Position numbers and translations under genes: made by a program
DNA from: Isurus oxyrinchus
Taxonomy: Eukaryota
Reading direction: 5' to 3'
NCBI GenBank assembly: GCA_026770705.1
Contig: JANJGN010000150.1
Coordinates: forward strand, 1,178,001 to 1,235,383
Length of the DNA stretch: 57,383 bases
Shown here: piece after piece, positions 2,615 to 53,990 of the stretch
Position numbering within the stretch: the first letter of the stretch is position 1
Layout: each line of letters starts with the position of its first letter
Notes under the pieces: model-generated
Told to the model about the DNA's origin: nothing
The model's database searches: none
What the model saw: only the letters and a program-made list of their open reading frames with translations

Positions 2615-2731
2615 AAGAAAGATGAGAAGGTTCTGGAAATGAAATCTAACCGCGGAGTCAATCCTGATACAGATGATGATCTTTACGCAAACTGTGAATT
2701 TGCTGAGGATTCTGTTTATGGGAATTTATAA
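2615..2731 (+). CDS. Terminal coding exon of an upstream receptor gene; cytoplasmic tail KKDEKVLEMKSNRGVNPDTDDDLYANCEFAEDSVYGNL* with an ITIM-like motif
   Basis: Pyrimidine tract tttctgtttctattacAG at 2597-2614, 38 open codons in phase 0, TAA at 2729-2731. SVYGNL fits S/I/V/L-x-Y-x-x-I/V/L and a second Tyr lies in DLYANC. Unique AT-rich UTR-like sequence follows. Confidence 0.65.
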   Translation, partial: KKDEKVLEMKSNRGVNPDTDDDLYANCEFAEDSVYGNL

Positions 2732-4555: not shown

Positions 4556-5216
4556 CAGCCTTGGCACCAAAGGGGTTACCAGTTTGCTTACGGTGCAAGA
4601 CAAAGTGTTGGTTTCTCACATTCACACCAACCACCTCACATTTTGATTCACAGTGACACATCAACCCTTTCTAATTAAATACACAGAGGGAGCAGCACAG
4701 GAAGAGGTCATTCAGCCCAAGCAGAGCGTGTGGGCAGTTCCTCCACAGGCGAGCAGTCGGTCCTGGGTAAGTAACAGAACGATTGGAATTCACTTCCACA
4801 ACCAACACCGTCCTTTGTTGATGTTGTGACTTTATAAAGTCAGATTCCAATGCTTGATGGCTTTGAAAGATTTCTACTGATTATTGAGATCTGGGTGTGA
4901 GGCTCAAGTTTGTTGTACAGAACATCTTTCTAGCTCAAGGGATGAGGTAAGTGCAGAGACACGAGCTTTGGGACATCCTGAGGTGGTGAAAGGCGCAATG
5001 GAAATGCAAGTCCTTCATTGTTTTTCTTTCTTAAAGCCTTGTGACACTCTGCAGAGCACCTATCATCCCACAGAGAATCAAATTAGTCTGTGAAGACATT
5101 GTCTAAAAGCAGTTCCGATCTCTCGACAGCTGTCGGACAAGAGGTGAGGTCTCATTAACTCCTTTCTCTTTCACAGCTTGAGAGTGAGAAGTGGATGGAA
5201 TATCTGGGAGTGGACA

Positions 5217-5256
5217 ATGATCGGGAAATCTTACTTCCTCCTGTCACTTCTCCAAG
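5217..5256 (+). CDS. Siglec-like gene, leader exon coding part (MIGKSYFLLSLLQ)
   Basis: Acceptor ctctttcacAG ends at 5176, ATG at 5217 in an ACAATGA context, hydrophobic stretch, phase-1 donor CAAG|GTAATA. Joins the V exon to give ...LLQVGLS/QEWK. Confidence 0.75.
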
Positions 5257-5431
5257 GTAATATCACCATCAGCTCAGACAGATTTATGGTTAATAGTCTT
5301 TGTAAAAGATCATTCTTATTGAGCTGTGATTGGGAACCGATTCAGCAGTGACCCAGTGTACAGACTCACAACAAGTCCCATTCACCCATCACCCCTGTGC
5401 TCACTGATATACACTGACTCCCTGTCTGGCA

Positions 5432-5605
5432 GCAGAATTGGAGGAGAGCAGAGATCTCAGAGGGCTGCAGGGGCTGGAGGAGGTTACAGAGATAGGGAGG
5501 GAAGAGGGGGTTTAAGGGATTGGAATTGAGGATGAGGATCTTAAAATCGAGGTGTTGCTTGACTGGGAGCCTATGTAGGTCAGCGTGAATGGGGGTGGGT
5601 GGTAA
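5432..5605 (-). mobile_element. L2-like LINE 3' fragment
   Basis: Reverse complement of the family at 8500-8970 and 16120-16420; contains one copy of the 37-bp unit. Confidence 0.55.
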
Positions 5606-6100
5606 AAGGTTGAGTAGAAAATCAGGAATAAAAACTGGGGATGAAGTCTATCCCGATGCTAGGAATCCGATAGCCATATACTGAAATTTGTGTCTTTTGC
5701 TGATTTTAGTCAGAATTTCTCATGAAGACAACACAGCAGCTCCTAGAATAGACAGGCTGTTCAGTGTCACAATTCCTGTCCATTCTCACCTTGCTAGATA
5801 CTTCAATAAGGGAGCAAGATAACTGAAAGAGAGAAGGAAGGTAAAGCTGTCCGTGTGTAAATGTGTCAATATTCAGTTTGCATATTTGTCTTTCTCTCGA
5901 CACATGCAGAGCTCAGGCTAGAGGCACTTTGTTAGTGTGTTTCACAGTCTCTGCTGGAGTAGGGTCAGTGCTGAACTTGGAGACAAGTCAGTCTACAATG
6001 CTGCATCCGAATCAACAATACAACAATATGGGGTTTGGATCAGAAATAATCCCTTAGACAATGAGGATCCAAAGAGATTCCATAGACAATGAGGTTCCAA

Positions 6101-7620
6101 TCTCCACCCCTCCATCATTTTCACGTGGTCCATCTCTGACACTTCCCTTCCCTTCCTTGACCTCTCTGTCTCAATCTCTGGTGATAGACTGTCCACCAAT
6201 ATCCATTACAAACCCACCGACTCCCACAGCTACCTCGACTACATCTCCTCACACCCCGCTTCCTGTAAAGACTCCATCCCATTCTCCCAGTTCCTTCGCC
6301 TTCGTCGCATCTGTTCCGATGATGCTACCTTCAAAAACGGTTCCTCTGACATGTCCTCCTTCTTCCTTAACCGAGGTTTTCCACCCACGGTCATTGACAG
6401 GGCCCTCAACCGTGTCCGGCCCATCTCCCACACATCCGCCCTCACGCCTTCTCCTCCCTCCCAGACACATGATAGGGTCCCCCTTGTCCTCACTTATCAC
6501 CCCACCAGCCTCCGCATTCAAAGGATCATCTCCGCCATTTCCGCCAACTCCAGCATGATGCCACCACCAAACACATCTTCCCTTCACCCCACTTATCGGC
6601 ATTCCGTAGGGATCGCTCCCTCTGGGACACCCTGGTCCACTCCTCCATCACCCCCTACTCCTCAACCCCCTCCTATGGCACCACCCCATGCCCACGCAAA
6701 AGATGTAACACCTGCCCCTTCACTTCCTCTCTCCTCACCGTCCAAGGGCCCAAACACTCCTTTCAAGTGAAGCAGCATTTCACTTGCATTTCCCCCAACT
6801 TAGTCTACTGCATTCATTGCTCCCAATGTGGTCTCCTCTACATTGGAGAGACCAAACGTAAACTGGGCGACCGCTTTGCAGAACACCTGCGGTCTGTCCG
6901 CAAGAATGACCCAAACCTCCCTGTCGCTTGCCATTTTAACACTCCACCCTGCTCTCTTGCCCACATGTCTGTCCTTGGCTTGCTGCATTGTTCCAGTGAA
7001 GCCCAACGCAAACTGGAGGAACAACACCTCGTCTTCCGACAAGGCACCTTACAGCCTTCCGGACTGAATATTGAATTCAACAACTTTAGGTCGTGAGCTC
7101 CCTCCCCCATCCCCACCCCATTTCTGTTTCCCCCTTTCTTTTTTTTCCAATAAATTATATAGATTTTTCTTTTCCCACCTATTTCCATTATTTTTAAATA
7201 TTTTAAAATCTTTTATGCTCTCCCCACCCCCATTAGAGCTATACCTTGAGTGCCCTACCATCCATTTTTAATTAGCACATTCGTTTAGATAATATCACCA
7301 ACTTTAACTTTAACACCTATGTGTTCTATTGTACCATTGTCGTTGACATCTTTTGATGATCTGCTTCTATCACTGCTTGTTTGTCCATATAACCACACCC
7401 CCAACCACCCCCCCAACCACCCCCCCAGCAACCTCTCTCTCTCTCTCTCTATCTCTCCACCCACCACACACACACCTTAAACCAGCTTATATTTCAACTT
7501 TTTCTTGGACTCGAACTCAAGTTCTGTCGAAGGGTCATGAGGACTCGAAACGTCAACTCTTTTCTTCTCCGCCGATGCTGCCAGACCTGTTGAGTTTTTC
7601 CAGGTAATTCTGTTTTTGTT
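6101..7620 (+). mobile_element. 5'-truncated Penelope-like element: RT C-terminus, GIY-YIG endonuclease and 3' pseudo-LTR
   Basis: Frame from 6102 reads LHPSIIFTWSISDTSLPFLDLSV...YKPTDSHSYL...FLRLRRICS. ORF 6767-7096 reads NLVYCIHCSQCGLLYIGETKRKLGDRFAEH...CHFN...GLN, with a frameshift near 6530. Possible TSD gaggttccaa (6091-6100) / gaggatccaa (7621-7630). Confidence 0.9.
7519..7558 (+). ncRNA. Minimal hammerhead-ribozyme motif (variant core) in the Penelope pseudo-LTR
   Basis: AGUU-CUGUCGA-A-GGGUC(augag)GACUC-GAA-ACGU-C-AACU: stem I AGUU/AACU, stem II, palindromic ACGU, GUC site. The core differs from CUGANGA at one position. Confidence 0.6.
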
Positions 7621-8086
7621 GAGGATCCAAAGAGATTCTTTAGAGAATGAAGATTACAAAATGCACTAATTATATTGAATCAGATTAGCCAATCAGCTGT
7701 GCTGAAGAGCAGACAGGAATGTTAGGCTAATTAGTGATTCATGACGGTGATAATGGGGGGAGTTCTGAGGGCTCCTAATCCATTGTCCTGTCTTGTAAAT
7801 CAGCACTGAATGGATCTCAATTGGTGCATCTTGTAGACACTGTGTTGGGTGGAAGACTGGCTTCACTAAACTGGGTCCTGAGGACCATGAGCCAATGTAG
7901 AATGAACTTGTCCACTCCTGTGTCCAGGATTCACTTCCATCCATTCTGAAACCTTGGGGAGTTCCTTGTGTGTCCTGGAGATGGTCCACACTGCAGCCAC
8001 TGTGCCCCAGTGATGGAGGGAGTGGATATCGAGTGTAGTGGATCGAAAAAACATCCACAGTTAAATATTGAGATTTCTCTCCCCAG

Positions 8087-8455
8087 TTGGACTGTCACAA
8101 GAGTGGAAGGGTGACACGCCACAAGAGGTGATAGCGCAGGAAGGTTCGTGTGTACAGATTCCATGTCATTACAGTTATCTATCAGAGTTGGAAAACCAAC
8201 TGCGAGCTAGAGTCTGGTTTAATAATGAGAAACAGATTCCCTGGGCTCCCATAGCCTTTCACTCCAAGGATCACAGTCACGAGTTACCACGGTTCCGGCA
8301 TCAGCCCCGGCTGTCTGGAGACCTGAAAGATGGCGACTGTTCCCTGATTATAACCAACATCAGACGGGAAGATGCAGGACCTTATTTTTTCAGAATAGAA
8401 TTTGACATCAGGAACAGTTACAGCTACTATCCTGTAACCCAGCTTCACGTTTCTG
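8087..8455 (+). CDS. Siglec/MAG-like V-set Ig domain exon, copy 1
   Basis: ctctccccAG acceptor, G|GTAAG donor, 369 nt, phase 1-1. GSCVQIPC, W, LSGDLKDGDCSL and DAGPYFFRIE give the Siglec Cys pattern (B-E disulfide, no F-strand Cys) and the essential Arg. Confidence 0.9.
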
Positions 8456-8499
8456 GTAAGTGCTGCGTTATAATTACTATTCCAACGCACTCCTGGCTG

Positions 8500-8970
8500 G
8501 TCTCGCACATTCTACCCTCTGTAAACTTGGGGTCATCTTAAACTCTGCAGCCCCTGTCTTAACCAGCAGTAACTCCCATTCCCTTATCCCCCCCTGTACT
8601 CTCTGACCTTGAATGGCTCCTGGACAAGCAATGTCTTGATTTCAAAATGCTTGTCCTTGCTTCCTCCCTATCTCTGTAATCTCCTCCTGTGCTACAGCCT
8701 TCCCAGATTTCTGCACTCCTCTACCTCTGGACTCTTCAGCATCCCTGATTTCCATCGCTCCAGCATGGACGGCCAAGCCTTCAGTAGCCTGGGTCCTGAG
8801 ACTTAAATCCTTTCATCTTTCTATCTCCTCCTTTAAGGTGCTCCTTAAAACCCACCTCTTCAACCAAGATTCTGATCACCTGACCTAATATCTCCTTATA
8901 TGGTGTGGGACGATACTTTGTATTATAATGCTCCTGTGTAGCACCTTGTGATGTTTTATTACAATATAAT
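8500..8970 (+). mobile_element. L2-like LINE 3' fragment in the V1-V2 intron
   Basis: Similar to 16120-16420 and 5432-5605 (cctatctctgtaatctcctcc...gccttcagtagcctgggtcctgag...ctccttaaaacccacctct). Confidence 0.55.
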
Positions 8971-9250
8971 CTATTGTTCTATGCTCCTCTAGACCATTTA
9001 TATTCTTAATTTCAAGGTATTATGCAACCTCCTTATTTTCCTGACCAAAATATAATACCTCACATGTATTAATGTTGAAATTAATTTGTCAATTAACTGC
9101 CCATTCTGCAAGTTTATTAATATCTTCCTGCAAATTTGTTGCAGTCCTCCCTATTATTGACCATCCCCCCAATTCAGCCACATCTGTAAATATCGGGTTC
9201 AGTGGATCTACAAACCATCCAGAGTTAAATATTGATATTTCTCTCCCCAG

Positions 9251-9619
9251 TTGGACTGTCACAAGAGTGGAAAGGTGACACTCCACGAGAGGTGACAGCG
9301 CAGGAAGGTTCGTGTGTACAGATTCCATGTCATTACAGTTATCCATCGTGTCTGGAAAACCAACCGCGAGGTGCAGTCTGGTTTAATAATGAGAAACAGA
9401 TTCCCTGGGCTCCCATTGCCTTTCACTCGAAGGATCACAGTCACGAGTTACCACGGTTCCGCCATCGGACCCGGCTGTCTGGAGACCTGAAAGATGGCGA
9501 CTGTTCCCTGATTATAAACAACATCAGACGGGAAGATGCAGGACCTTATTTTTTCAGAATAGAATTTGACAATGGTTCGAGCTATAACTATTATCCTGTA
9601 ACCCAGCTTCACTTTTCTG
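9251..9619 (+). CDS. Siglec/MAG-like V-set Ig domain exon, copy 2
   Basis: Same length (369 nt) and phase as copy 1, intact AG/GT, about 91% identical by hand count (32 nt differences), YFFRIE retained. Confidence 0.9.
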
Positions 9620-9874
9620 GTACGTGCTGTGTTATAATTACTCAACAATTCACATTCAACACTCAATGGGAAATAACACAAACTGTGACGTTTACATATT
9701 AACACAAAACACAGTTTATTATAACACACTGTCTGATTCTCAATAACCTGGTGATAGCTTCCAGTTCAGTCCTAAAGCAACCTCTAATACTTACTTAAAT
9801 ATCAATGATTAAATGTACTGACTGTGTCCATCAATGTTATCAACTCCCATCGATCTCTCTAATCCTCTTTTAAA

Positions 9875-10045
9875 CGAAAGACTTGCATTTCTATAGCGCC
9901 GTTCACCACCTCAACACGTCTCTTGCATGTTCACAGCCAATGAAATATTTCCTGAGTTGTCGTTATCGTTGTCATGTCAGAAACACAGCTGACAATTAAT
10001 GCACAGAAAGATCCCACAGACTGCAATAACATAAATAACCCAGAT
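9875..10045 (-). mobile_element. Deu-domain SINE 3' fragment
   Basis: agacttgcatttctatagcgcc...cacagccaatgaa...gatcccacagactgcaat, reverse complement of the SINE tail. Confidence 0.65.
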
Positions 10046-10321
10046 CACTGAGACAATGGCCAGAGGGTGCACTCCAAACTCTGGTCTGCTCCACCACCCT
10101 CACCCACTATTATCAGTTCAAGTTTCTCGGAGTGAACATGTATTAAGCTGAGAGACAGAAACACCAAAGTCTCAAAGCAGGAAATTCTCTCCTGATCATT
10201 GTAATCTCTCAGTTCTGATATCATCCTTGTAAAAGTGCTTTCTCTTGTGGGACTGTGATTTCTATTTGAACTGATGCTTCACGTTATATTTCTCTAAAAG
10301 GATCCATTCTCTGTCTGTTAG

Positions 10322-10677
10322 ATTTCACAGATAAACCCACGATATTCCCTGCTGAAATTATTGCAGGAAAGCATGTGGATGTAAGCTGCACCTTCAACAC
10401 AACGTGCAATGGAACAGCAGCACCTGTCTTAACCTGGGACACTCCCACTGACGTACCTGGATCAGTCTCAAACACTGTAACTCAGCATGGTGTCACTCTG
10501 ACCTATACTTCTGTTCTGACCCTGACCCCATCACTCAAACACCACGGACACACTCTCAGCTGCAGAGTGAGATATCCATCTGTTTCATCGGAGCGTACCC
10601 TCGTACTAACTGTGCAACAGAAGTACAGACATCCTTCATTCTACATTAGCGACAGTCCGGTACTCCCCCGGTACTGA
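10322..10677 (+). CDS. Siglec-like C2-set Ig domain exon, read through to a stop codon
   Basis: ctctgtctgttAG acceptor, phase 1. DFTDKPTIFP...VSCTFNTTCNGTAAPVLTW...TSVLTLTPSLKHHGHTLSCRVRY...LVLTVQ, with the extra Cys typical of Siglec domain 2. The expected donor after 10618 reads C|AGAAGT; TGA at 10675-10677. Confidence 0.8.
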
Positions 10678-11114
10678 TCTCTAACAATGCAGCACTCCCT
10701 CAGTACTGATCTCCAACAATGCAGCGCTCCCCAGATACCGATCTCCAACAGTGCAGCACTCCCTCAGTACTGATCTCCGACAGTGCAGCACTCCCCCAGT
10801 ACTGATGTCCAACAGTCCAGCACTCCCCCAGTACTGATCTCCGACAGTGCAGCACTCCCCCAGTACTGATCTCCGACAGTGCAGCACTCCCTCAGTACTG
10901 ACCCTCTGACAGTGCAGCACTCCCTCAGTAGTGATCTCCGACAGTGCAGCACTCCCTCAGTACTGACCCTCTGACAGTGCAGCACTCCCCCAGTACTGAT
11001 CTCCGACAGTGCAGCACTCCCTCAGTACTGACCCTCCAACAGTGCAGCACTCCCCCAGTACTGAGCCTCTGACAGTGCAGCACTCCCTCAGTCATAATCC
11101 TCCGACAGTGCAGA
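10657..11114. repeat. 33-bp minisatellite (ACAGTGCAGCACTCCCTCAGTACTGACCCTCCG)
   Basis: Tandem repeat; source of the TVQHSLSTDPP and STEGVLHCRRV ORFs. Confidence 0.95.
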
Positions 11115-11127
11115 GTTCCTTCTGGGA

Positions 11128-12215
11128 AAGGCAGTGGTGTAGTCGCTGGATGAGTAATCCAGAGTCCTGGGGTAATCTGCTGGGGACCTTGGTTCAAATC
11201 CCATCACGGCAAATGGTGAAATTTGAATTCAATAAAAAAAAACCTGCTGATAACTACTGTCCTAAAAACCTCTCTAGTTTCACTAATGCCCTTTAAAGAA
11301 GGAAATCTGCTGTCCTTACCTGGTTTGGCCTGCATGCGACACCGGGCCCACAGCGATGTGGTTGACACTGAACTCGCCCTCCGAAATGGCTGAGCAAGCC
11401 GCTCAGTTGTGTTACAAAGGAATGAAACCAGATGGACCACCCAATGTCAACCAAGGCACTGGAAACGAAAACGGCAATCTCAACCCTGTCGACCCTGCAA
11501 AGCCCTCCTTACTAGTCCTCCTCACTAACTTCGATGGGAGAGCTAGTCAAGCAACAGCCTGACATAGTCATCCTTACAGGTAATGTCCCAGGCACCACCA
11601 TCACCATCCCTGGGTATGTCTTGTCCCACTGCCCAGCAGAGGTGGCAGCAGAGGGAGTTGCCCTGGGAGCCCTCCTCATCAACTCCAGATCCCAGGAAGT
11701 CTCATGCCATCAGGTTACACATGGGCAAGGAAACCTCCTGCTGATTACCACGTACCGGCCTCCCTCAGCTCATGAACCCGTGCTCCTCCATGTTGATCAG
11801 CGTTTGGAGGAAGCACTGAGGGTGGTAAAGGTGCAGAATCTACTTTAGGTGGGGGGATTCAATGCCCATCACCAAGAGTGGCTCCTTGGCGCCTCTGAGG
11901 ATCCAAAGAGATTCCTTAGACAATGGGGATCCAACAGCATCTTCCTAAATCGCGACCTCTACCACCTAGAAGGACAAGGGCAGCAGACACATGGGAACAC
12001 CACCACCTGGAAGTTTCCCTTCAAGTCACTCACCATCCTGACTTGGAAATATATCACCGTTCCTTCACTGTCGCTGGGTCAAAATCCTGGAACTCCCTCC
12101 CTAACAGCACTGTGGGTGTACCTACACTACAGGGACTGCAGCGGGTCAAGAAGGCAGCTCACCACCCCCTTCTCAAGGGCAATTATGGAACAATAAATGC
12201 TGGCCCAGCAAGCGA
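11128..12215 (+). mobile_element. SINE-like head plus internally deleted LINE of a second family (APE endonuclease remnant and 3' end)
   Basis: tRNA-like boxes (gtggtgtagtcgctgg, ggttcaaatccc), then QQPDIVILT...IPGY...TTYRPPS...GGFNAHHQEW. The 3' segment matches 34470-34770. Confidence 0.75.
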
Positions 12216-12440
12216 CACCCTCATCAAGAGCTTGACGAAAAAATGGTTCTTGATCCTCATTTCCTCTACTTCAATGCAAGTGGCTAGTCATCTCACTCAG
12301 TTTCTTATTGTCAGGAATATCAGTTCTGCTTGTGTTGTACAGATCCGCTGATGCTTTATTGCTTCGCAAATATCTATCATCTTTCAGTAACAAATTAAGG
12401 AACCAATGATCATGCAAGAGAAACTATGAGGGAGCTGACA

Positions 12441-14452
12441 TCAGTATGAGAGTAGCCCTCCTTCAGTACTGCCCCTCCGACAGTGCAGCACTCCCTCAGT
12501 ACTGACCCTCCGACAGTGCAGCACTCCCTCAGTATTGACCCGCCGACAGTGCAGCACTCCCTCAGTACTGACCCTCCGACAGTGCAGCACTCCCTCAGTA
12601 CTAACCCTCCGACAGTGCAGCACTCCCTCAGTATTGACCCTCCGACAGTGCATCACTCCCTCAGTACTGACCCTCCGGACAGTGCAGCAATCCCTCAGTA
12701 GTGACCCTCCGACAGTGCAGCACTCCCTCAGTACTGACCCTCCCGATAGTGCAGCACTCCCTCAGTACTGACCTTACGACAGTGCAGCACTCCCTCAGTA
12801 CTGACCCTCCGACAGTGCATCACTCCCTCAGTACTGACCCTCCGGACAGTGCAGCAATCCCTCTGTACTGATCCTCTGACAGTGCATCACTACCTCAGTA
12901 CTGACCCTCCGGACAGTGCAGCAATCCCTCTGTACTGATCCTCTGACAGTGCAGCACTCCCTCAGTACTGACCCTCCCGATAGTGCAGCACTCCCTCAGT
13001 ACTGACCTTACGACAGTGCAGCACTCCCTCAGTACTGACCCTCCGACAGTGCATCACTCCCTCAGTACTGACCCTCCGGACAGTGCAGCAATCCCTCTGT
13101 ACTGATCCTCTGTCAGTGCAGCACTCCCTCAGTACTGACCCTCCTGATAGTGCAGCACTCCCTCAGTATTGACCTTCCGACAGTGCAGCACTCCCTCAGT
13201 ACTGACCGACAGTGCAGCTCACCCTCAGTACTGTCCCTCCGACAGTGCAGCACTCCCTCAGTACTGACCCTCCGACAGTGCAGCTCTCCCTCAGTACTGA
13301 TCCTCCGACAGTGCAGCACTCCCTCAGTACTGACCTTCTGACAGTGCAGCTCTCCCTCAGTACTGACCCTCCGACAGTGCAGCACTCCCTCAGTACTGAC
13401 CCTCCAACAGTGCAGCACTCCTTCAGCACTGACCCTGACAGTGCAGCACTCTTTCAGCACTGACCCTCCGACAGTGCAGCACTCCCTCAGAACTGACCCT
13501 CGACAGTGCAGAGCTCCCTCAGTACTGACCTTCTGACAGTGCAGCACTCCCTCAGTACTGACCCTCCGACAGTGCAGCACACTCTCATTACTCACCCTCT
13601 GACAGTGCAGCACTCCCTCAGTACTGACCTTCTGACAGTGCAGCACTCCCTCAGTACTGACCTTCTGACAGTACAGCACTTCCTCAGTACTGACCCTCTG
13701 ACAGTGCAGCACTCCCTCACTACTGACCCTCTGACAGTGCAGCACTCCCTCAGTACTGACCTTCTGACAGTGCAGCACTCCCTCAGTACTGACCCTCCGA
13801 CAGTGCAGCACTCCCTCAGTACTGACCCTCTGACAGTGCAGCACTCCCTCCGTCCTGACCTTCTGACAGTGCAGCACTCCCTCAGTACTGACCCTCTAAC
13901 AGTGCAGCACTCCCTCAGTACTGACCTTCTGACAGTGCAGCATTCCCTCAGTACTGACCCTCCGACAGTGCAGCACTCCCTCAGTACTGACCCTCTGACA
14001 GTGCAGCACTCCCTCCGTACTGACCCTCTGACAGTGCAGCACTCCCTCAGTACTGACCCTCTAACAGTGCAGCACTCCCTCAGTACTGACCTTCTGACAG
14101 TGCAGCACTCCCTCAGTACTGACCCTCTGACAGTGCAGCACTCCCTCAGTACTGACCTTCTGACAGTGCAGCACCCCCTCAGTACTGACCTTCCGAAAGT
14201 GCAGCACTCCCTCAGTACTGACCCTCTGACAGTGCAGCACTCCCTCAGTACTGACCCTCTGACAGTGCAGCACTCCCTCAGTACTGACCCTCTGACAGTG
14301 CAGCACTCCCTCAGTACTGACCTTCTGACAGTGCAGCACTCCCTCAGTACTGACCCTCCGACAGTGCAGCTCTCCCTCAGTACTGACCCTCCGACAGTGC
14401 AGCTCTCCCTCAGTACTGACCTTCTGATAGTGCAGCACTCCCTCAGTACGGA
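12441..14452. repeat. 33-bp minisatellite array, about 60 copies
   Basis: Same unit as 10657-11114. Confidence 0.95.
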
Positions 14453-14934
14453 TCATTTTTCAGCTAACAGGAACTGAGTAGGGCCTTGAGGGGCCTGGCC
14501 AGGTTAAAAATCGCACCATCACAGAAAACGAACGTCATCATCGTGATGCAGGACAACAACAGCTAGCAAATTTATTTAGACTTCTATTCATGTGATGCTG
14601 TGTCTTTTACTGCCAATTAATAAATTGAAACTGCTTAACGAACATTGCAAGGCAATTTTAAATTATATCAGAGGATGTCACCTCACTTTTCAACAAGTTG
14701 GTTGTTTAAAAAAAATTCTCCTCATCTCCCCCTCTGGCTCTTTTCCCGATTCTCTTCAATCTGTGTCCCTCTGGTTACCGACCCTCCTGCCACTGGAAAC
14801 ACTTTCTCCTTATTGACTCTACCGAGACCTCTTCACGATTCTGAACGGCTTGATTCAATCTCCTGTTAGTCCTTACTGCCCAAATAGAATTAACGTCTTG
14901 CAGCCCTCAGGGCTTGTGTACCTCAAATTCCTGC

Positions 14935-16120
14935 ATCCCACAATCTCTGTAACCTCCTCCAGCCCCTACAACCCTTTCTGTAACCTCCTCCAGCCACTAC
15001 AACCCTTTCTGTAACCTCCTCCAGCCCCTACAATCCTCCCTATCTCTGTAACTTCCTCCAGCCACTACAACCCTCCCTATCTCTGTAACCTCCTCCAGCC
15101 CCTACAATCCCCCCTATCTCTGTAACCTCCTCCAGTCCCTACCACCCTCCCTATCTCTGTAACCTCCTCCAGCCCCTACAATCCTCCCTATCTCTGTAAC
15201 CTCCTCCAGCCACTACAACCCTCCCTATCTCTGTAACCTCCTCCAGCCACTACAACCCTCCCTATCTCTGTAACCTCCGCCAGCCACTACAACCCTCCCT
15301 ATCTCTGTAAACTCCTCCAGCCCCTACAAACCTCCCTATCTCTGTAACCTCCTCCAGCCCCTACAACCCTCCCTATCTCTGTAACCTCCTCCAGCCCCTA
15401 CAACCCTCCCTATCTCTGTAACCTCCTCCAGCCCCTAAAACCCTCCCTATCTCTGTAACCTCCTCCCGCTCCTACAATCCTCTCTGCAACCTCCTCCAGC
15501 CCCTACAACCCTCCCTATCTCTGTAATCTCTTCCAGCCCCTACAACCCTCACTATCTCCGTAACCCCCTCCAAATCCTACAACCCTCCCTATCTCTGAAA
15601 CCTTCTCCAGCTCTTACATGCCTTCCTACCTTTGTAACCTCCTCCAGCCCCTAAAACCTTTCCTATCTCCATAAGCTCCTCCAGCTCCTACAACCCTCTC
15701 TGCAACCTCCTCCAGCCCCTACAACCCTCCCTATCTCTGTAACGTCCTCCAGCCCCTGCAACCCTATCTCTGTAAACACCTCCAGCCCCGACACCCCTCA
15801 CTATCTCTGTAACCTCCTCCAGCGCCTACAACCCTCCCTATCTCTGTAACCTCCTCCAGCTCCTACAACCCTCTCTGCAACCTCCTCCAGCCCCTACAAC
15901 CCTCCCTATCTCTGTAACGTCCTCCAGCCCCTGCAACCCTCCCTATCTCTGTAACCTCCTCCAGCTCCTACAACCCTCTGCAACCTCCTCCAGCCCCTAC
16001 AACCCTCCCTATCTCTGTAACGTCCTCCAGCCCCTGCAACCCTCCCTATCTCTGTAACCTCCTCCAGCCCCTAAAACCCTCCCTATCTCTGTAGCCTCCT
16101 CCATCTCCTACAACCCTCCG
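14935..16120. repeat. 37-bp minisatellite (CTCTGTAACCTCCTCCAGCCCCTACAACCCTCCCTAT)
   Basis: Tandem repeat running directly into the L2-like 3' sequence at 16120-16420. Confidence 0.95.
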
Positions 16121-16420
16121 AGATCTCTGTGCTGCTCCAATTCCTGCTTCTTGAGCATCGCCTGATTCCCATCGCTCCACCACTGGAGAAGCCTTCAGCT
16201 GCCTGGGGCCTAAGCTCTGGAATTCCCTCCCTCAATCCCATTGCGCCTCTTTCTCTCTCTCTCTCCTTCTTTAAGACGCCCCTTAAAACCAACCAATCTG
16301 ACGGGGCTTTGGGTTGCCTGCCCCAATATCTCCCTACGTGGCTCGGGATCAAACTGAGTTGGGTAATCACTCCTGCTAAGTGCCTCAGGGCAGTTAACCC
16401 TATTAAACGTGCGATATAAG
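16120..16420 (+). mobile_element. L2-like LINE 3' end
   Basis: gagatctctgtgctgctccaattc...gccttcagctgcctggggcctaagctctggaattccctccct; similar to 8500-8970. Confidence 0.55.
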
Positions 16421-38729: not shown

Positions 38730-41670
38730 GCACTCACATTACAACGAAAACTAACTGAATGGATTGCGAGAAAACACAGACAGATTTGACGATAGACAGG
38801 CAATGGCTGGTATTTAAAGGAATATAATAACGGTCTACAACAGATATACATTCCTCTAAGACCCAAGCAGCCAAAGGGAAAGGTAAATCCATCGTGGTTA
38901 ACAAAAGGAGTTAAAAACTGCATTAAATCAGAGGAAATGGTTGGTAAGATTGATAGAAAAGGTAGTGAGACTGAGGATTGGGAGCAATTTAGAACGCAGC
39001 AAAGGAGGACCAAGGAACTGATAGAGACAGGGAAAAGGGAATATGAATATAAACTAGTGAGGAAGATGGCGATGGCCCAGTGGTATTGTCACTGGATTAG
39101 TGATCCTGAGACTCAGGGTAATGCTCTGGGGGCCTGGGTTCAAATCGCAGATGGTGAAATTTGAATTCAATAAACATCTGGAATTGCTGATTGTCGTAAA
39201 GACTCATCTAGTTCACTAATGCCCTTTAAGGAAGGAAATCTGCTGTCCTTACACACAAAGCAAAGCTCCCTCTGCACCGTCCCCATCAAACGCTCCCTGG
39301 ACAGGTACAGTACGGGATTAGATACAGAGTAAAGCTCCCTCTACACTGACCCCATCAAACACTCCCAGGACAGGTACAGCACGGGGTTAGATACAGAGTA
39401 AAGCTCCCTCTACACCGTCCCCATCAAACACTCCCAGGACAGGTACAGCACGGGGTTAGATATAGCAATATGGTTGACTTCTTTTAAATGGCCTAGGAAG
39501 CCATTCAGTTAGGGATGGGCAATAAATGCTGAGCCAGCGATGCACAGGTCCCCTGAAGGAATTTAAAAAAATAAAGGCAGACTGTAAAAGCTTCTTTAGG
39601 TAGGTGAGAAGGAAAAGGTTAGCGGGAACAAGTGTGGGTCCATTACAGGTGGAGACAGGAGAATTTTAATGGAGAACAGGGAAATGGCGGAGAAGCTAAA
39701 AAATTACTTTGCATCTGTCTTCCCGGAGGAAGATACAGGGAAACTCCCAGGAATATTATGTGACCGAGGGACTTGTGAAACTGAGGAACTAGAAGAAATG
39801 GGTATTAGTGCAGAGGTAGTGCTTGAAAAATTAACTGGACTGAAGATTTGTCAAATCCCCTGTATCTGACGAGCTTCATCCCAGAGTGATGGAGGAGGTG
39901 GCTGGAGAGATGGTGGATACATCGGTGGTTATCGTTCAAAATTCAGAACGTTCTGGAAAGATTCCTGCAGACTGGAAAGTAGCAAATGTAACCCCACTAT
40001 TTCAGGAGGGAGGGAGAGGGAGAATGGAGAACAACAGACCTGTTAGTCTGATGTCAGTAGCAGGGAAAATGTTGGAATCTATTATTAAGGTCATTTAGAA
40101 AAGAATGGTAAAATTGGGCAGAGTCAGCATGGATTTCCGAAAGGGAAATTATGTTTGACAAACTTCTTGGAGTTTTCTGAGGATGTCACTTGCGGCATGG
40201 GTAAGGAGAACCAGTGGATGTGGTGTATTTGGATTTTCAGGAAGTTTTTCATAAAAGGTCCCACACAGGAGGTTAGCGAACAAAATTAGAGCACATGGGA
40301 TTGGGGGTAATACCAAGGCTCCTTTGACAGCACCTTCCAAACCCACGGCCTCTACCATCTAGAAGGAAAAGGGCAGCAGATAGATGGGAACACCACCACC
40401 TGGAAGTTCCTCTCCAAGCCACTCACCATCCTGATTTGGGAATATATCGGCTGTTCCTTCACTGTCACTGGGTCAAAATCCCGGCACTCCCTCCCTAACA
40501 GCTACACCACATGGGCCGCAGCGGTTCAAGAAGGCAGCTCACCACCCCCTTCTCAAGGGGCAATTAGGGAAGGACGATAAATGCTGGGCCCAGCCAGCGA
40601 AGCCCATATCCCGTGAATGAATAAAAAGAAGTATCCTGGTATGGAGGGAGAATTGGTTAGCAAGCAGAGAGTAGGAACCAACGGATGATTTTCAGGATGG
40701 CGGGCTGTTATTACTGGGGAACCACAAGGATCCATGCTAGGCCCAGAGCTGTTCACAATCTATGTTAATGATTTGGATGTGGAGACCAATTGTAATCTTT
40801 CCAAATTTGCTGGTGACACCAAAGTGGGCGGGAATGCAAGTTGCGAGGAGGATGCAGGGAGGCTTCAAGGGGATTTTGGACAAGCTAAGTGAAAGGGCAA
40901 GAACATGGCAGATGGAATATAATGTGACTTAGTGTAAAGTTAAAAAAAAACCTGAAAGGCAGAGTATTCCCATCATGACAAGAGGTTGGGAAGTGCAGGT
41001 GTCCAAAGGGACCTGGGAGTCCTTGTTCATGAGTCACTAAGGGTTAGCATATGGGTATGTTGGCCTTCATTGCGAGGGGATTTGAGTACCGGAGTAAAGA
41101 TGATGCCTTGCTGCAATTATATAGAGCCTTGGTGAGATCCCATCTGGAGTATTGTGAACAGTGTTGGTCCCCTTATCTAAGGAGGGGGTGCATTTGCCAC
41201 AGAGGGAGTGTAACAGACGCGTACCAGATTAATCCGTGGATGGGGGTATTCTCTTCTGAAGGGAGATTGAGGAGACTGGGCCTGTATTCCCCAGAGTTTC
41301 TAAGAGTGAGGGGTGACCTCATTGAAACTTACAAGGTTCTGACAGGATGTGACAGAGTGGATGTAGATAGGATGATTCCCCTGGCTGGTGAGTCTAAAAC
41401 CAGGGAACACAGTTTCAGAATAAGGGTAGGCCATTTAAGACTGAGGTGAGGAAGAATTTCTTCACTCACAGGGTGGTGGATGTTTGGAATTCCCTGCCCC
41501 ATTGAGCATCTTCAAGACAGAGATCAATAGGTTTCTGGAGACCAATGACATCAAGGGATACGGGGATAGCACAGAAAAGTGGTGGTGAGGTAGATGATCA
41601 GCCATGATCTAGTTGGACGGTGGAGCAGGCTTGATGGGCCGAATGGCCTACTCCTCATCTTATGTTGCTA
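38730..41670 (+). mobile_element. Long decayed CR1 LINE with nested inserts (SINE 39070-39560; second-family LINE tail 40312-40625)
   Basis: IPADWKVANVTPLF, NNRPVSLMSVAGKMLESII, LYRALVRSHLEYCEQCWSPY, LRGDLIETYK; 3' end near 41620-41665. Confidence 0.9.
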
Positions 41671-41676
41671 TGCTGC

Positions 41677-42570
41677 CAGTGCGAGTACTGAGGGAGTGCT
41701 ACACTGTCGGAGGGTCAGTACTGAGGGAGTGCTGCACTGTCAGAGGGTCAGTTCTCAGGGAGTACTACACTGTCGGAGGGTCAGTGCGGAGGGAGTGCTG
41801 AAAGTTGGACGGTCAGTACTGAGGGAGTCCTGCATAGTCGAAGGGTCAGTACTGAGAGAGTGTTGCACTGTCAGAGGGTCAGTACTGAGGGAGTGCTGCA
41901 CTGTCGGAGGGTCAGTATTGAGGGAGTGCTGCACAGTCGAAGGGTCAGTACTGAGGGAGTGCTGCACTGTCATAGGGTCAGTACTGAGGGAGTGCTGCAC
42001 TGTCGGAGGGTCAGTATTGAGGGAGTGCTGCACTGTCGGAGGGTCAGTACTGAGGGAGTGCTGCACTGTTGGAAGGTCAGTACTGAGCGAGTGCTGCACC
42101 GTCAGAGGGTCAGTATTGAGGGAGTGCTGCACTGTCGGAGGGTCAGTACTGAGGGAGTGCTGCACTGTTGGAAGGTCAGTACTGAGCGAGTGCTGCACCG
42201 TCAGAGGGTCAGTACTTAGGGAACACTGCACTATCAGAGGGTCATTACTGAGGAAGGCCTGCACAGTCGAAGGGTTAGTACTGATCGAGCACTGCGCTGT
42301 CGGAAGTGCTGTCTTTCAGACGAGTCATTAAACCGAGGCTCGACCTGCCCTCTCTGGTATGTGCAACACATCCACGGCCACCATGAGAGGGGCTTCCCCT
42401 GGTGGCCACAGAGCAACGTTTCTCCCCCAAACAACATGATGGAAAACAGATGGTCTGGGCCACTGTCACGTCACTGTTTTGTGGGATCTTGCTGTGCGCG
42501 TCGTTGGAGCCGCGTTTCCTACATCACAACGGTGACTCTGCTTCAAAAAAAAAAACTCCGCCGTCGGCTT
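41677..42570 (+). mobile_element. 33-bp array (41677-42303) continuing into a Deu-domain SINE body
   Basis: Units run into ctgtcggaagtgctgtctttcagacgag...aaaccgaggc...gtgggatcttgctgtgcgc. Confidence 0.85.
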
Positions 42571-51100: not shown

Positions 51101-52069
51101 CGTACACATCCACGAGGATGGTTTCTTGGTTTTGTTAGTTGACCCCCCACCCCCCCACCCACCCCCGCCCCCTCAGCTCCAAGGTGGATGTGTGAACGGT
51201 TAAAATTTTTCACTCCCAAACACGGGCAGAGAGAATCCCGCTCCGCCCGTGCGTGCGTGACCAGGTGTTACGTTCGATCGATCCGTCAGACGTTGAGACG
51301 TACTTCACGCCGGGGGTTCAGCACCCGGGGTGGAAAATGGACCCTTTGACTCGGTTGGGGTTGGCGGGCGGCAATAAGGGGCTCAGCCTGACTTCAGGAT
51401 TACCGCAGGTGCGCGTGATCCTTGGTGAGCAGCAAACTTGGCTTCTCGCTGACGGAAGATCGGCGTGCGCCTTGTAATTGGATGCGTTTCATTGCCGGAA
51501 AATTGCGGGAAATCACCTATCGATGTTTGTTTTCCACGCCCCCCCCCCACCTCCATCGCTCTTATCCGTCACGTGGAAAGTGTTTGTTCGAATCCCGTTC
51601 CGCAGGGACGTTCTGCTGCTCTTCTTCACTGGCGAGTCCTCGTTGGGCCTTCTGAATTAACTGGGCTTGTGAAGCCCAGGTCTCTGAGCCACAGCAGGGG
51701 GAGCTGTGGGTGTGGATGAGAGAACAGTTCCACCTCCGGAGTTGGTTAGAGGGTGCGATAAGTTATTAAGCCGATGGTGCGTGCAGGGTACCGACAGCCA
51801 ATGCCTTGAAAGGAAGGGGAAGTCGTTGAAATACGAGCTGAGGGTTGCACTCAGCAGCAGGAAAACCAGAAAGGGGAAGGGTACATGGCGCTCTTCGCTG
51901 AGTTCAACGGTAAGCTGTCTCAGGACGTGGACAGTCCTGGAGGTGCCAGCTTCAGGGTTTATCGTCACATCCACGCACAGCTTTAAGACACAGTGCTTTC
52001 CATGAGCTATTCTGTCTGGCGGGCGTGTACAGTTCATGTTCTGTCGGGAATGACGGGCGCGAGGCCGTG

Positions 52070-53990
52070 CAATGGTGGGTAGGGCTCCCACTTGCGAGTC
52101 AGTGGGGCATGGGTCTGAGCCCCACTCCTGCAGACTGACAGCGAAGTTTTGGGCAGACGTTCCAGTGCAGATAGCGAGGGGGTGCTGCGCCGTCGGAGGG
52201 TCAGTACTGAGGGAGTGCTGCACCGTCGGAGGGTCAGTACTGAGGGAGCGCTGCACCGTCGGAGGGTCAGTACTGAGGGAGTGCTGCACCGTCGGAGGGT
52301 CAGTACTGAGGGAGTGCTGCACCGTCGGAGGGTCAGTACTGAGGGAGTGCTGCACCGTCGGAGGGTCAGTACTGAGGGAGTGCTGCACCGTCGGAGGGTC
52401 AGTACTGAGGGAGTGCTGCACTGTCAGAGGGTCAGTACTGAGGGAGCGCTGCACTGTCAGGGGGTCAGTACTGAGGGAGTGCTGCACCGTCAGGGGGTCA
52501 GTACTGAGGGAGTGCTGCACCGTCGGAGGGTCAGTACTGAGGGAGTGCTGCACCGTCGGAGGGTCAGTACTGAGGGAGCGCTGCACCGTTGGAGGGTCAG
52601 TACTGAGGGAGTGCTGCACCGTCGGAGGGTCAGTACTGAGGGAGTGCTGCGCCGTCGGAGGGTCAGTACTGAGGGAGTGCTGCGCCGTCGGAGGGTCAGT
52701 ACTGAGGGAGCGCGCTGCACCGTCGGAGGGTCAGTACTGAGGGAGCGCTGCACCGTCGGAGGGTCAGTACTGAGGGAGCGCTGCACCGTCGGAGGGTCAG
52801 TACTGAGGGAGTGCTGCACCGTTGGAGGGTCAGCACTGAGCGAGTGCTGCACCGTCGGAGGTCAGTACTGAGGGAGTGCTGCACCGTCGGAGGGTCAGTA
52901 CTGAGGGAGTGCTGCACCGTCGGAGGGTCAGTATTGAGGGAGTGCTGCACCGTCGGAGGGTCAGTGCTGAGGGGGTGCTGCACCGTCGGAGGGTCAGTGC
53001 TGAGGGGGTGCTGCACCGTCAGAGGGTCAGTACTGAGGAGGTGCTGCACTGTCGGAGGGTCAGTACTGAGGGAGTGCTGCGCTGTCGGAGGGTCAGTACT
53101 GAGGGAGTGCTGCACTGTCGGAGGGTCAGTACTGAGAGAGTGCTGCACTGTCGGAGGGTCAGTACTGAGAGAGTGCTGCACTGTCGGAGGATCAGTACTA
53201 AGGGGGTGCTGCACTGTCGGAGGATCAGTACTAAGGGGGTGCTGCACTGTCAGAGGGTCAGTACTGAGGGAATGCTGCACTGTCAGAGGATGAGTACTGA
53301 GGGAGTGCTGCACTTTCAGAAGATCAATACGGAAGAAGCGCTGCACTGTCAGAGGGTCAGCACTGAGGGAGTGCTGTACTGTCAGAGAGTCAGTAACAAG
53401 GGAGTGTTTCGCTGTCATCGTGTCAGTACTGAGGGAATGCCGCACTGTCGGAGGATCAATACTGATGGAGTGCTGCACTGTCAGAGGGACAGTACTGAGG
53501 GAGTGCTGCACTGTCAGAGGGTCAGCACTGAGGGAGGGCTGCACTGTCAGAGGGTCAGCACTGAGCGAGTGCTGTACTGTCAGAGGGTCAGCACTGAGCG
53601 AGTGCTGCACTGTCAGAGTGTCAGTACTGAAGGAGTGCTGCACTGTCAGAGGGTCAGTAATGAGGTAGCGCATTGCTGTCATCCTGTCAGTACTGAGGGA
53701 GCAGTGCACTGTCGGAGAGTCAATGCTGAGGGGCGCGGCACCCTCAGAGATGTGGTCTTTCTGATGAGCCATTAAGCCGGGGCCTCGTCTGTCCTCTCAG
53801 GCATTACTTGGAAGAAGAGCAGTAGGAAGTTCTCCCCGGTGTCCTGGGGTCAATATTTATCCCCCAGCTAACTTCATTATCACATTGCTGTTTGTGTGAG
53901 CTTGCTGTGCACAAATTGGCTGCTGCGTTTCCTACATTACAACAGAGACCGCACTTCAAAAAAAAGTCTTTCGTTGGCTGTGAAACGCTT
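52070..53990 (+). mobile_element. Near full-length Deu-domain tRNA SINE with an internal 33-bp segment expanded about 47-fold (52176-53735)
   Basis: Degenerate tRNA-like head at 52070-52175, then the array, then the body gaagaagagcag...ttctccccggtgtcctggggtcaatatttatccc...cattgctgtttgtgtgagcttgctgtgcacaaattggctgc. Confidence 0.85.

What the first reader, a model, noticed from the sequence alone, without database searches (positions are those of the whole stretch)
8035..9645. Tandem duplicated Siglec V-set exons that differ mainly in loop regions
Seen: two 369-nt phase 1-1 exons with intact splice sites. Hand count gives 15 amino-acid and 10 synonymous codon differences, clustered after the B-strand Cys (LSELENQLRAR vs PSCLENQPRGA) and after the essential Arg (DIRNSYSY vs DNGSSYNY, a new N-glycan sequon). 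Homology extends only about 50 nt upstream and 25 nt downstream of the exons. Known: Siglecs normally have one V-set domain; human Siglec-12 is the two-V exception. Inference: either a bivalent V-V-C2 lectin or a cassette system in which one leader splices to alternative sialic-acid-binding V exons. Exon-limited similarity also suggests gene conversion.
Basis: partly seen in the sequence, partly recalled or inferred. Interest (0 to 1): 0.78.

Follow-up and report, generated by a model that had tools for sequence, protein, structure and literature searches.

The report
Two-headed shark Siglec gene exons
A shark immune-lectin (Siglec-type) gene carries two intact sugar-binding "head" exons in a row; this is an old two-head layout that automatic annotation already records in other sharks and rays, not a fresh oddity.

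Summary
Exons at 8087-8455 and 9251-9619 are each 369 nt, phase 1-1, with AG/GT sites. They differ at 32 nt, giving 15 amino-acid and 10 synonymous codon differences, clustered in two loop patches.

Both are Siglec-type V-set domains with the key Arg. The pair is old. V1 groups with the first head, and V2 with the second head, of a basking-shark model built leader-V-V-C2-stop. V2 has an extra Cys seen in 20 of 26 non-first heads, 0 of 18 first heads and 4 of 86 single heads.

In the patches synonymous divergence is about 16 times that of the rest of the exon, while dN/dS is about 0.33 in both. This points to mosaic ancestry or gene conversion, not loop-directed selection.

By my cut-offs 18 of 114 elasmobranch relatives have two to four heads. 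This scan had already reported multi-head Siglec genes on other DNA of this genome.

Use of both heads in one transcript is not shown. One RNA-like contig from a related organism joins leader to V2. The gene here also lacks a donor after C2 and any membrane exon.

The parts
5217..5256 (+). Candidate leader exon (MIGKSYFLLSLLQ plus the first base of a split codon; donor AAG|GTAATA, phase 1)
   Evidence: It is 100% identical to the leaders of Carcharodon P0157 and P0014. In one search a joint runs from here (5256 after the cut shift) to 9251.
8026..8478 (+). Homology block A (V1 exon plus 61 nt upstream and 23 nt downstream)
   Evidence: blastn self-match, 453 bp at 91.2% without gaps; alignment. 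The flanks differ at 10 of 84 bases.
8087..8455 (+). V1 exon: first-head-type Siglec V-set domain (Cys21, Cys26, Cys84, Arg102; Glu at 33)
   Evidence: It groups with the first head of Cetorhinus P0169 at 95/85.
8179..8211 (+). V1 patch 1, codons 31-41 (after the B-strand Cys; LSELENQLRAR)
8392..8394 (+). V1 Arg102 codon, in YFFRIEF
   Evidence: Aligned with the YYFR/YFFR Arg of MAG and Siglec-5 chains.
8407..8427 (+). V1 patch 2, codons 107-113 (after the Arg; IRNSYSY)
   Evidence: Over codons 106-113 it matches Cetorhinus P0169 head 1 (DIKNSYSY) at 7 of 8.
8479..9189 (.). Spacer (711 bp) with no counterpart after V2; it holds a dispersed repeat piece at about 8663-8800
   Evidence: matches at 16078-16214, 5433-5500 and in the 15.2-15.9 kb arrays. 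Contigs of related organisms lie on it (table 8).
9190..9642 (+). Homology block B (V2 exon plus flanks)
9251..9619 (+). V2 exon: second-head-type Siglec V-set domain (extra Cys33, Arg102, NGS sequon at 107)
   Evidence: It lies in a 23-row clade (98/95), most of whose rows are non-first heads.
9349..9351 (+). Cys33 codon (TGT) of V2
   Evidence: Cys at this column in 20 of 26 non-first heads, 0 of 18 first heads and 4 of 86 single heads.
9571..9591 (+). V2 patch 2, codons 107-113 (NGSSYNY)
   Evidence: All four runs laid read C at 9577 and 9583, which gives Pro109 and His111 as in relatives' DNGPSHNY.
10322..10677 (+). C2-set exon (Ig part 10322-10617) running through to an in-frame stop at 10675-10677; no phase-1 GT donor
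   Evidence: The read-through tail QKYRHPSFYIS matches the CKYRHPSFYIS tail of Cetorhinus isoform X6, P0163.

Best explanation
The two exons are the first-head (V1) and second-head (V2) exons of an old two-head Siglec-type gene of a shark. The closest annotated kin are in Cetorhinus maximus and Carcharodon carcharias. Gene order is leader (5217-5256), V1, V2, C2. All junctions are phase 1, so serial splicing would give V1-V2-C2 with a Val codon at the V1/V2 joint, as in relatives' models. V2 belongs to a lineage of non-first heads. It carries an extra Cys a few residues after the B-strand Cys, at the spot where the C2 domain has the Cys that bonds the V domain in known Siglecs. I therefore infer that this Cys staples V2 to the spare Cys21 of V1. 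The exon cores are kept alike by gene conversion within lineages, while two loop patches stay head-specific and are shared with the basking-shark counterpart. The two heads would thus present the same Arg-based sialic-acid pocket with different surrounding loops. Shown here: exon anatomy, family membership by sequence, kinship of each head, the Cys association, and mosaic divergence. Inferred: joint inclusion in one mRNA, the disulfide, different ligand fine-specificity, and a secreted product, because this copy has no donor after C2 and no membrane exon.
For: The V1 donor is the GTAAGT consensus and the two acceptors are almost identical, so V1 has full exon signals.

Family: Pfam V-set (41.3 and 47 bits) and Ig_CD22 in both exons. 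The best solved chains are MAG, Siglec-5, sialoadhesin, Siglec-7, Siglec-8 and CD33, and the Arg aligns with theirs.

Relatives: the top 7 of the 150 listed hits have 2-4 V-like stretches. They are NCBI models from Scyliorhinus, Cetorhinus, Hypanus, Mustelus and Chiloscyllium. Of 114 relatives, 18 have 2 or more V-type domains.

The Cetorhinus 'Siglec-12' model P0169 (360 aa) is leader-V-V-C2 and then stops. Its head 1 is 86.9% identical to V1, with DIKNSYSY against DIRNSYSY, and its head 2 is 89.3% identical to V2. Four-sequence site patterns give 3 orthology, 0 concerted and 0 third.

Tree: V1 plus P0169 head 1 get 95/85, and V2 lies in a 98/95 clade of mainly non-first heads.

Cys33 is present in 20 of 26 non-first, 0 of 18 first and 4 of 86 single heads. 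Three of those four single heads (P0173, P0175, P0199) look like N-truncated multi-head models.

The C2 exon has the conserved C..(6)..C pair, aligned with MAG and CD33. A V-C2 interdomain disulfide is described for Siglec-6 (Cys46-Cys172, PMC10122656, passages read) and for CD33 C169 (PMC7426717, passage read).

Mosaic: patch dS is 1.29 against 0.078 elsewhere, with dN/dS 0.33 and 0.32. Against Mustelus, Scyliorhinus and Chiloscyllium pairs there are 3-9 concerted sites and 0-1 orthology sites.
Against: No transcript with both heads was seen. Among the 15 joints shown of 295, none touches 8087 or 8455. One contig of RNA-like run X17 joins 5256 to 9251 and so skips V1. None of the 32 contig pieces listed lies on V1. 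The V1 bins of the two RNA-like runs read 0.31 and 0, then 11.5 and 4.1, against 1292 and 360 on V2; the tool warns that contig depth cannot rank parts of a gene. The runs differ from the window by about 1-8 other letters in 100 in the listed pieces, so they are relatives or other individuals, and their contigs may come from paralogues.

V1 has changes at positions that are almost invariant in 16 relatives' domains: P31L (15 of 16 Pro), R72Q (16 of 16), T73P (16 of 16), N89T (15 of 16). It also has 7 private changes since the basking-shark counterpart, against 0 in V2. This would fit relaxed constraint, though the basking-shark heads have 5 and 9.

An open frame is weak evidence: 25-48% of simulated copies stay open after 16-32 random substitutions.

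The gene has no phase-1 donor after C2 and no TM or cytoplasmic exon in the window, so it may be a decaying fragment.

Relatives' models are automatic predictions. The Cys association is not corrected for shared ancestry.
Confidence: 0.5

Rival explanations
1. V1 is an unused or rarely used exon copy sitting in intron 1. The gene makes leader-V2-C2 only, and V1 drifts while still open by chance.
For:: a leader-to-V2 joint (GT..AG, X17, one contig, 58 letters on the shorter side). V2-to-C2 joints are in both RNA-like runs. No listed piece or joint lies on V1. V1 is derived at 4 near-invariant positions; 7 private changes in V1 against 0 in V2; an open frame is expected in 25-48% of neutral copies. 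The Carcharodon model P0157 is leader-V-C2-TM with one head. A CD33 variant lacking its V exon is on record at mRNA level (PMC7426717, passage read).
Against: The V1 splice signals are as good as or better than those of V2. The V1 loop patch is kept between this genome and the basking-shark model, 7 of 8. V2 has the Cys typical of heads that follow another head. The closest relative's model includes both heads. The RNA-like contigs are from other organisms and may belong to single-head paralogues that share the identical leader.
Confidence: 0.27
2. Cassette use: the leader splices to V1 or to V2 in different transcripts, or both one-head and two-head isoforms are made. This would give receptors with alternative loop sets.
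For: All three junction types are phase-compatible. A leader-to-V2 contig exists while relatives' models hold two heads. NCBI lists several isoforms for the related Cetorhinus gene: X3 is V-V-TM without C2 and X6 is V-V-C2 read-through.
Against: No V1-to-C2 joint was seen. The loose end at 10321 that looks V1-like (G where V2 has T) is simply the ancestral Val121 state, found in 16 of 16 relatives. No signals for mutually exclusive splicing were found. The 795-nt intron between the exons is ordinary.
Confidence: 0.15
3. A recent tandem duplication followed by positive selection on the loops.
For: Overall identity is 91% and amino-acid differences cluster in loops next to the ligand-binding Arg.
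Against: Synonymous divergence inside the patches is about 16 times that outside (1.29 against 0.078), and dN/dS is 0.33 against 0.32. Codons differ at two or three bases at once. The patches are shared with other species' heads. V1 and V2 are separated by a 98/95 split. The patch limits were chosen after seeing the data, and only about 12 synonymous sites lie in them.
Confidence: 0.05
4. Assembly artefact: two haplotypes of one exon joined in tandem.
For: None beyond the 91% identity.
Against: A unique 711-bp spacer separates the copies. Contigs of related organisms lie on the spacer and across its border with V2, at 9155-9266. The two copies match different heads of another species' two-head model. 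8.7% divergence with two dense patches is not allelic.
Confidence: 0.02

Closest known systems
Cetorhinus maximus 'sialic acid-binding Ig-like lectin 12'
   Same: It has leader, two V heads and one C2, then ends just after ..TVQ with no membrane span. Head 1 is 86.9% identical to V1 with the same loop after the Arg (7 of 8). Head 2 is 89.3% identical to V2 and has Cys33.
   Different: It is an automatic gene model of another species. Its leader differs at 2 residues. It ends ..TVQWK, whereas the window reads ..TVQQKYRHPSFYISDSPVLPRY.
Human/chimpanzee Siglec-12 (Siglec-XII), the mammalian Siglec with two V-set domains
   Same: Two V-set domains lie in series ahead of C2 domains (PMC6288428, passages read).
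   Different: Siglec-12 has a membrane span and inhibitory tail (recalled). The shared name in shark annotation is automatic; orthology was not tested and is unlikely given the separate expansions. Here both heads keep the Arg, while the human protein has the R122C mutation of the essential Arg (PMC6288428).
Paired mammalian Siglecs kept alike by gene conversion (Siglec-5/14, Siglec-11/16)
   Same: Exon-limited homogenisation of V-set sequence between neighbouring copies (PMC6288428 and PMC13358205, passages read). Here this appears as mosaic dS and concerted site patterns.
   Different: There the conversion is between genes. Here it is inferred between two exons of one gene, and probably among paralogues, with two loop patches spared.
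Multi-head Siglec-like gene models of other sharks and rays, and loci of this same genome reported earlier by the scan
   Same: They have 2-4 V-type domains in 18 of 114 relatives. Earlier scan notes describe four- and seven-V genes and the non-first-head Cys.
   Different: This locus has only two heads, no young repeat array, and no membrane exon.

Membership tests
Siglec (sialic-acid-binding Ig-like lectin) | N-terminal V-set Ig domain of the Siglec type | tested here: met
   Pfam V-set (41.3 and 47 bits; cut-off 26) and Ig_CD22 (38.3 and 39; cut-off 27) in both exons. The best PDB chains are MAG, Siglec-5, sialoadhesin, Siglec-7, Siglec-8 and CD33.
Siglec (sialic-acid-binding Ig-like lectin) | Conserved Arg on the F strand that binds the sialic-acid carboxylate | tested here: met
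   Arg102 in YFFRIEF in both exons, aligned with the Arg of MAG (YYFRGDL) and Siglec-5 (YFFRVE). The column is Arg in 116 of 130 relatives' heads. The role of this Arg is established knowledge (PMC6288428, PMC12953582 abstract).
Siglec (sialic-acid-binding Ig-like lectin) | Three-Cys pattern of the V domain (B-E pair plus one Cys for the bond to the next domain), and a C2 domain with the partner Cys | tested here: met
   Cys21, Cys26 and Cys84 are in both exons; these columns are Cys in 128-130 of 130 heads. The C2 exon has SCTFNTTC, aligned with the MAG and CD33 C..C. The bonds themselves are not testable here.
Siglec (sialic-acid-binding Ig-like lectin) | Binding of sialylated glycans | not testable with these tools
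   Needs glycan arrays with each head and Arg mutants.
Siglec (sialic-acid-binding Ig-like lectin) | Type-I membrane protein with an ITIM-type tail or a charged membrane span | tested here: not met
   No TM or cytoplasmic exon downstream of C2 in the window (tblastn with 4 relatives' tails, nothing below E=0.38 on the gene's side). There is no phase-1 donor after C2. Relatives do have such tails (P0157, P0160, P0175). So this copy is at most a soluble member or a fragment.
Two-V (multi-head) Siglec architecture | Two or more V-set exons in series, same phase, between leader and C2 | tested here: met
Two-V (multi-head) Siglec architecture | Both heads present in one mRNA or protein | tested here: inconclusive
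   only leader-to-V2 and V2-to-C2 joints were seen, in contigs of related organisms. 280 of 295 joints were not shown. There is no RNA run of the window's own organism on record.
Two-V (multi-head) Siglec architecture | Extra Cys in the non-first head (feature proposed by this scan, not in print) | tested here: met
   V2 has Cys33 and V1 has Glu33. The counts are 20 of 26, 0 of 18 and 4 of 86.

The most novel reading that the evidence does not exclude
Lamniform sharks keep a secreted, anchor-less two-head Siglec (V1-V2-C2). Its heads would be disulfide-stapled through the non-first-head Cys. They would hold two different, species-conserved loop sets around the same Arg pocket. The protein would be a soluble bispecific sialoglycan sensor or decoy, maintained beside the membrane-bound paired receptors.
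Probability: 0.2. Interest if true: 0.6.

Novelty: new member of a known kind. Interest (0 to 1): 0.35.

Why it matters
Textbook Siglecs have one sialic-acid-binding head. Shark and ray genomes show that stacking heads is an old and widespread option, and I found no paper on it in the library searched.

This locus is a clean, small example. It lets three things be tested directly:
- whether stacked heads are stapled by a dedicated cysteine;
- whether the heads keep different loop sets, and so different ligand preferences, while gene conversion keeps their cores alike;
- whether an anchor-less two-head form is made.

On its own the locus adds one more member to a pattern that gene annotation and earlier reports of this scan already show.

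Tried and rejected
- A regular-expression search for classic Ig C..W..YxC exons printed nothing, because Siglec heads lack that pattern. I then used ORF lists and tblastn.
- Rfam on 7000-11000 gave no match.
- The search for membrane or tail exons of this gene found nothing convincing.
- I first read the loose end TTCACGTTTCT at 10321 as a possible V1-to-C2 splice. I rejected that because the G is the ancestral Val121 state, seen in 16 of 16 relatives, so a relative's V2 explains it.
- I first took V1's long branch (0.13 against 0.02) as a sign of decay. With the basking-shark counterpart as reference its 7 private changes are within the range of that species' heads, 5 and 9, so I keep it only as weak evidence.
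- The first tree (47 rows) left V1 and V2 in one unresolved group. The second tree (48 rows chosen at 72% or more identity to V1 or V2 out of 130 heads) resolved them. Rows under 72% were left out of it.
- I rejected recent duplication plus loop selection, and assembly artefact, for the reasons given under the rival explanations.
- I did not predict a structure. The tool returns no coordinates, so the Cys-Cys distance could not be read.
- Exons were never joined.
- Searches for print were. I saw listings and abstracts, plus passages of PMC6288428, PMC8455134, PMC13358205, PMC10122656 and PMC7426717. No paper in them describes multi-head Siglecs of sharks. Supplementary file 9 of the whale-shark paper (PMC8455134) lists Siglec families and was not seen, because supplements are closed. 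Subscription journals are not covered.
Full report
**What is there.**
The window holds two 369-nt exons, at 8087-8455 (V1) and 9251-9619 (V2). Each follows ...CTCTCCCCAG and precedes GT. In phase 1 both read as open 122-codon frames.

The differences cluster. The two best 31-nt windows hold 21 of the 32, a value reached in 0 of 5000 random placements.

Gapless similarity covers 8026-8478 against 9190-9642 (453 bp, 91.2%), that is 61 nt before and 23 nt after the exons, and nothing beyond. The 711-bp spacer has no counterpart after V2 and holds a piece of a dispersed repeat. No third V-like exon is in the window.

**What the exons encode.**
Both pass Pfam's cut-offs for V-set and for the CD22-type first Ig domain. 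The best solved chains are MAG, Siglec-5, sialoadhesin, Siglec-7, Siglec-8 and CD33, and Arg102 in YFFRIEF aligns with the sialic-acid-binding Arg of those proteins. Cys21, Cys26 and Cys84 are present in both.

Upstream, ATG 5217 opens a 13-residue hydrophobic leader ending in a phase-1 donor at 5256. Downstream, a C2-set exon starts at 10322. The order is therefore leader, V1, V2, C2, all joints in phase 1. A V1-V2 joint would make a Val codon, as in relatives' two-head models.

**Relatives.**
A full HMMER search with V2 gave 1481 hits at E of 0.001 or less. The 7 best all have 2-4 V-like stretches. They are NCBI models from Scyliorhinus, Cetorhinus, Hypanus, Mustelus and Chiloscyllium, named Siglec-8, -12 or -13 by the pipeline.

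A word search with the Cetorhinus two-head protein returned 114 elasmobranch proteins, none from the window's own genome. By my cut-offs (60 bits or more, 86 or more query positions), 86 have one V-type domain, 12 have two, 4 have three, 2 have four and 10 have none. So two heads are uncommon but far from unique in this group.

Earlier reports of this scan had already described four-head and seven-head Siglec genes on other DNA of this genome. My counts agree with their statement that annotation already records such layouts.

**The pair is old.**
The closest match to V1 is head 1 of a Cetorhinus maximus 'Siglec-12' model of 360 aa. That model is leader, V, V, C2 and then stops.

- V1 against its head 1 is 86.9% identical; V2 against its head 2 is 89.3%.
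- V1 against V2 is 87.7%; the model's own two heads are 82.0% identical.
- Informative four-sequence sites give 3 for V1=head 1 and V2=head 2, 0 for V1=V2, and 0 for the third grouping.
- In a 48-row tree, V1 and that head 1 form a clade (95/85). V2 lies in a 23-row clade (98/95), most of whose rows are non-first heads from several shark orders.
- The V1 loop after the Arg is DIRNSYSY here and DIKNSYSY in the basking shark. V2's PSCLENQPRGA matches PSCLENQPRGG of at least eight lamniform heads at 10 of 11.

**Mosaic divergence.**
Inside the two patches (codons 31-41 and 107-113) dS is 1.29 and dN is 0.42. Outside them dS is 0.078 and dN is 0.025. The ratio is about 0.33 in both. Several patch codons differ at two or three bases. 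That is not what loop-directed positive selection on point mutations gives. It is what a mosaic of old and young sequence gives.

Against two-head proteins of Mustelus, Scyliorhinus and Chiloscyllium, sites where V1=V2 and the other species' two heads agree with each other number 3-9, against 0-1 orthology sites. They lie in the core, not the patches.

There are two caveats. The patch limits were set after seeing the data, with only about 12 synonymous sites.

**The extra cysteine.**
V2 has Cys33, seven residues after the B-strand Cys; V1 has Glu there. Across 130 heads this column is Cys in 20 of 26 non-first heads, 0 of 18 first heads and 4 of 86 single heads. Three of those four (P0173, P0175, P0199) look like N-truncated models of multi-head genes.

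In the C2 exon the equivalent spot (SCTFNTTC) aligns with the second Cys of MAG and CD33 C2 domains. That Cys forms the V-C2 interdomain bond described for Siglec-6 (Cys46-Cys172) and involves C169 of CD33 (PMC10122656 and PMC7426717, passages read).

I infer that Cys33 of V2 bonds the spare Cys21 of V1. This is not shown, and the counts are not corrected for shared ancestry.

**Is V1 used?**
This is the weak point. No RNA run of the window's own organism is on record. The best holders have at most 0.34 of the sampled words. The pieces laid differ from the window by roughly 1-8 letters in 100, with fixed differences in all four runs, for example at 9374, 9429, 9577 and 9583. They are therefore relatives or other individuals.

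In two RNA-like runs, contigs join V2 to C2 (9619/10322, GT..AG, both runs). One contig of X17 joins the leader directly to V2 (5256/9251, GT..AG), skipping V1. None of the 15 joints shown (of 295) touches V1. None of the 32 listed pieces lies on V1. V1 bins read near zero in the RNA-like runs, while the DNA-like runs have depth there. The tool warns that contig depth cannot rank parts of a gene.

Many paralogues share the identical leader, and single-head genes such as Carcharodon P0157 exist. The leader-V2 contig may well belong to one of them.

- For use of V1: a consensus donor (GTAAGT, against GTACGT for V2), a near-identical acceptor, the conserved loop, and the two-head model of the closest relative.
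- Against: V1 has changes at four nearly invariant positions, P31L, R72Q, T73P and N89T, and 7 private changes against 0 in V2.
- An open frame alone says little, since 25-48% of simulated copies stay open.

**The rest of the gene.**
After C2 there is no GT in phase 1. Where a Cetorhinus read-through isoform reads ..TVQ-C-KYRHPSFYIS, the window reads ..TVQ-Q-KYRHPSFYIS and runs to a stop at 10675-10677. No membrane or tail exon was found downstream. The basking-shark counterpart model also ends right after ..TVQ. So this copy is either a soluble two-head (or one-head) lectin or a decaying fragment, and I cannot tell which.

**Other details.**
The NGS sequon is private to this genome's V2. Relatives have Pro or Leu at 109, and all four runs read C at 9577.

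**Verdict.**
The locus is a new member of a layout that is already annotated in sharks and rays, already reported by this scan on other DNA of this genome, and, as far as my six searches show, not described in a paper.

Noticed in passing
window 10600-10680: The C2 exon has no phase-1 GT donor. The window reads CAA CAG AAG TAC.., where a Cetorhinus read-through isoform implies a Cys codon at that spot. The frame runs on to a stop at 10675-10677 and then into a 33-bp minisatellite. A contig of X17 stops fitting at 10617 with 27 letters left over.
   Followed up: partly
window 10680-14500, 41650-42420, 52040-53260: Long arrays of a 33-bp unit (translating as ..PPTVQHSLSTD..) appear at several places and on both strands. 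Other minisatellites of 16, 37, 44 and 69 bp fill much of the window.
   Followed up: no
window 6090-7620: A retroelement-like stretch with long open frames lies in intron 1. Its contig depth in all four runs is hundreds to thousands of times that of its flanks, so it is a high-copy repeat.
   Followed up: no
window 2615-2728 and 4679-4759 (+): Two pieces resemble the cytoplasmic tail of the Carcharodon CD33-like protein P0014 (55% and 70% identity), but in the reverse of their order in that protein. The first carries tyrosine motifs (..DLYANCEF....SVYGNL). It is probably the end of the upstream Siglec-like gene plus a stray copy.
   Followed up: no
window about 26000-46100 (-): Exons of the PP2A scaffold subunit A alpha (PPP2R1A) lie on the minus strand. 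The ORF at 35005-35199 matches it at E=9e-42. So the Siglec-like gene sits next to PPP2R1A.
   Followed up: partly
window 5195-5254 (+): An upstream ATG in another frame gives MEYLGVDNDREILLPPVTSP, 95% identical to the start of Carcharodon isoform X2 (P0013). That isoform enters the V exon midway, so it looks like an annotation of an out-of-frame start.
   Followed up: no
window 8478-8696: A 534-letter contig of run X12 fits only with its letters 316-534, starting exactly at the end of the V1/V2 homology. Its first 315 letters, where V1 would lie, do not fit at 93% or more. In that organism V1 may be more diverged or absent.
   Followed up: no
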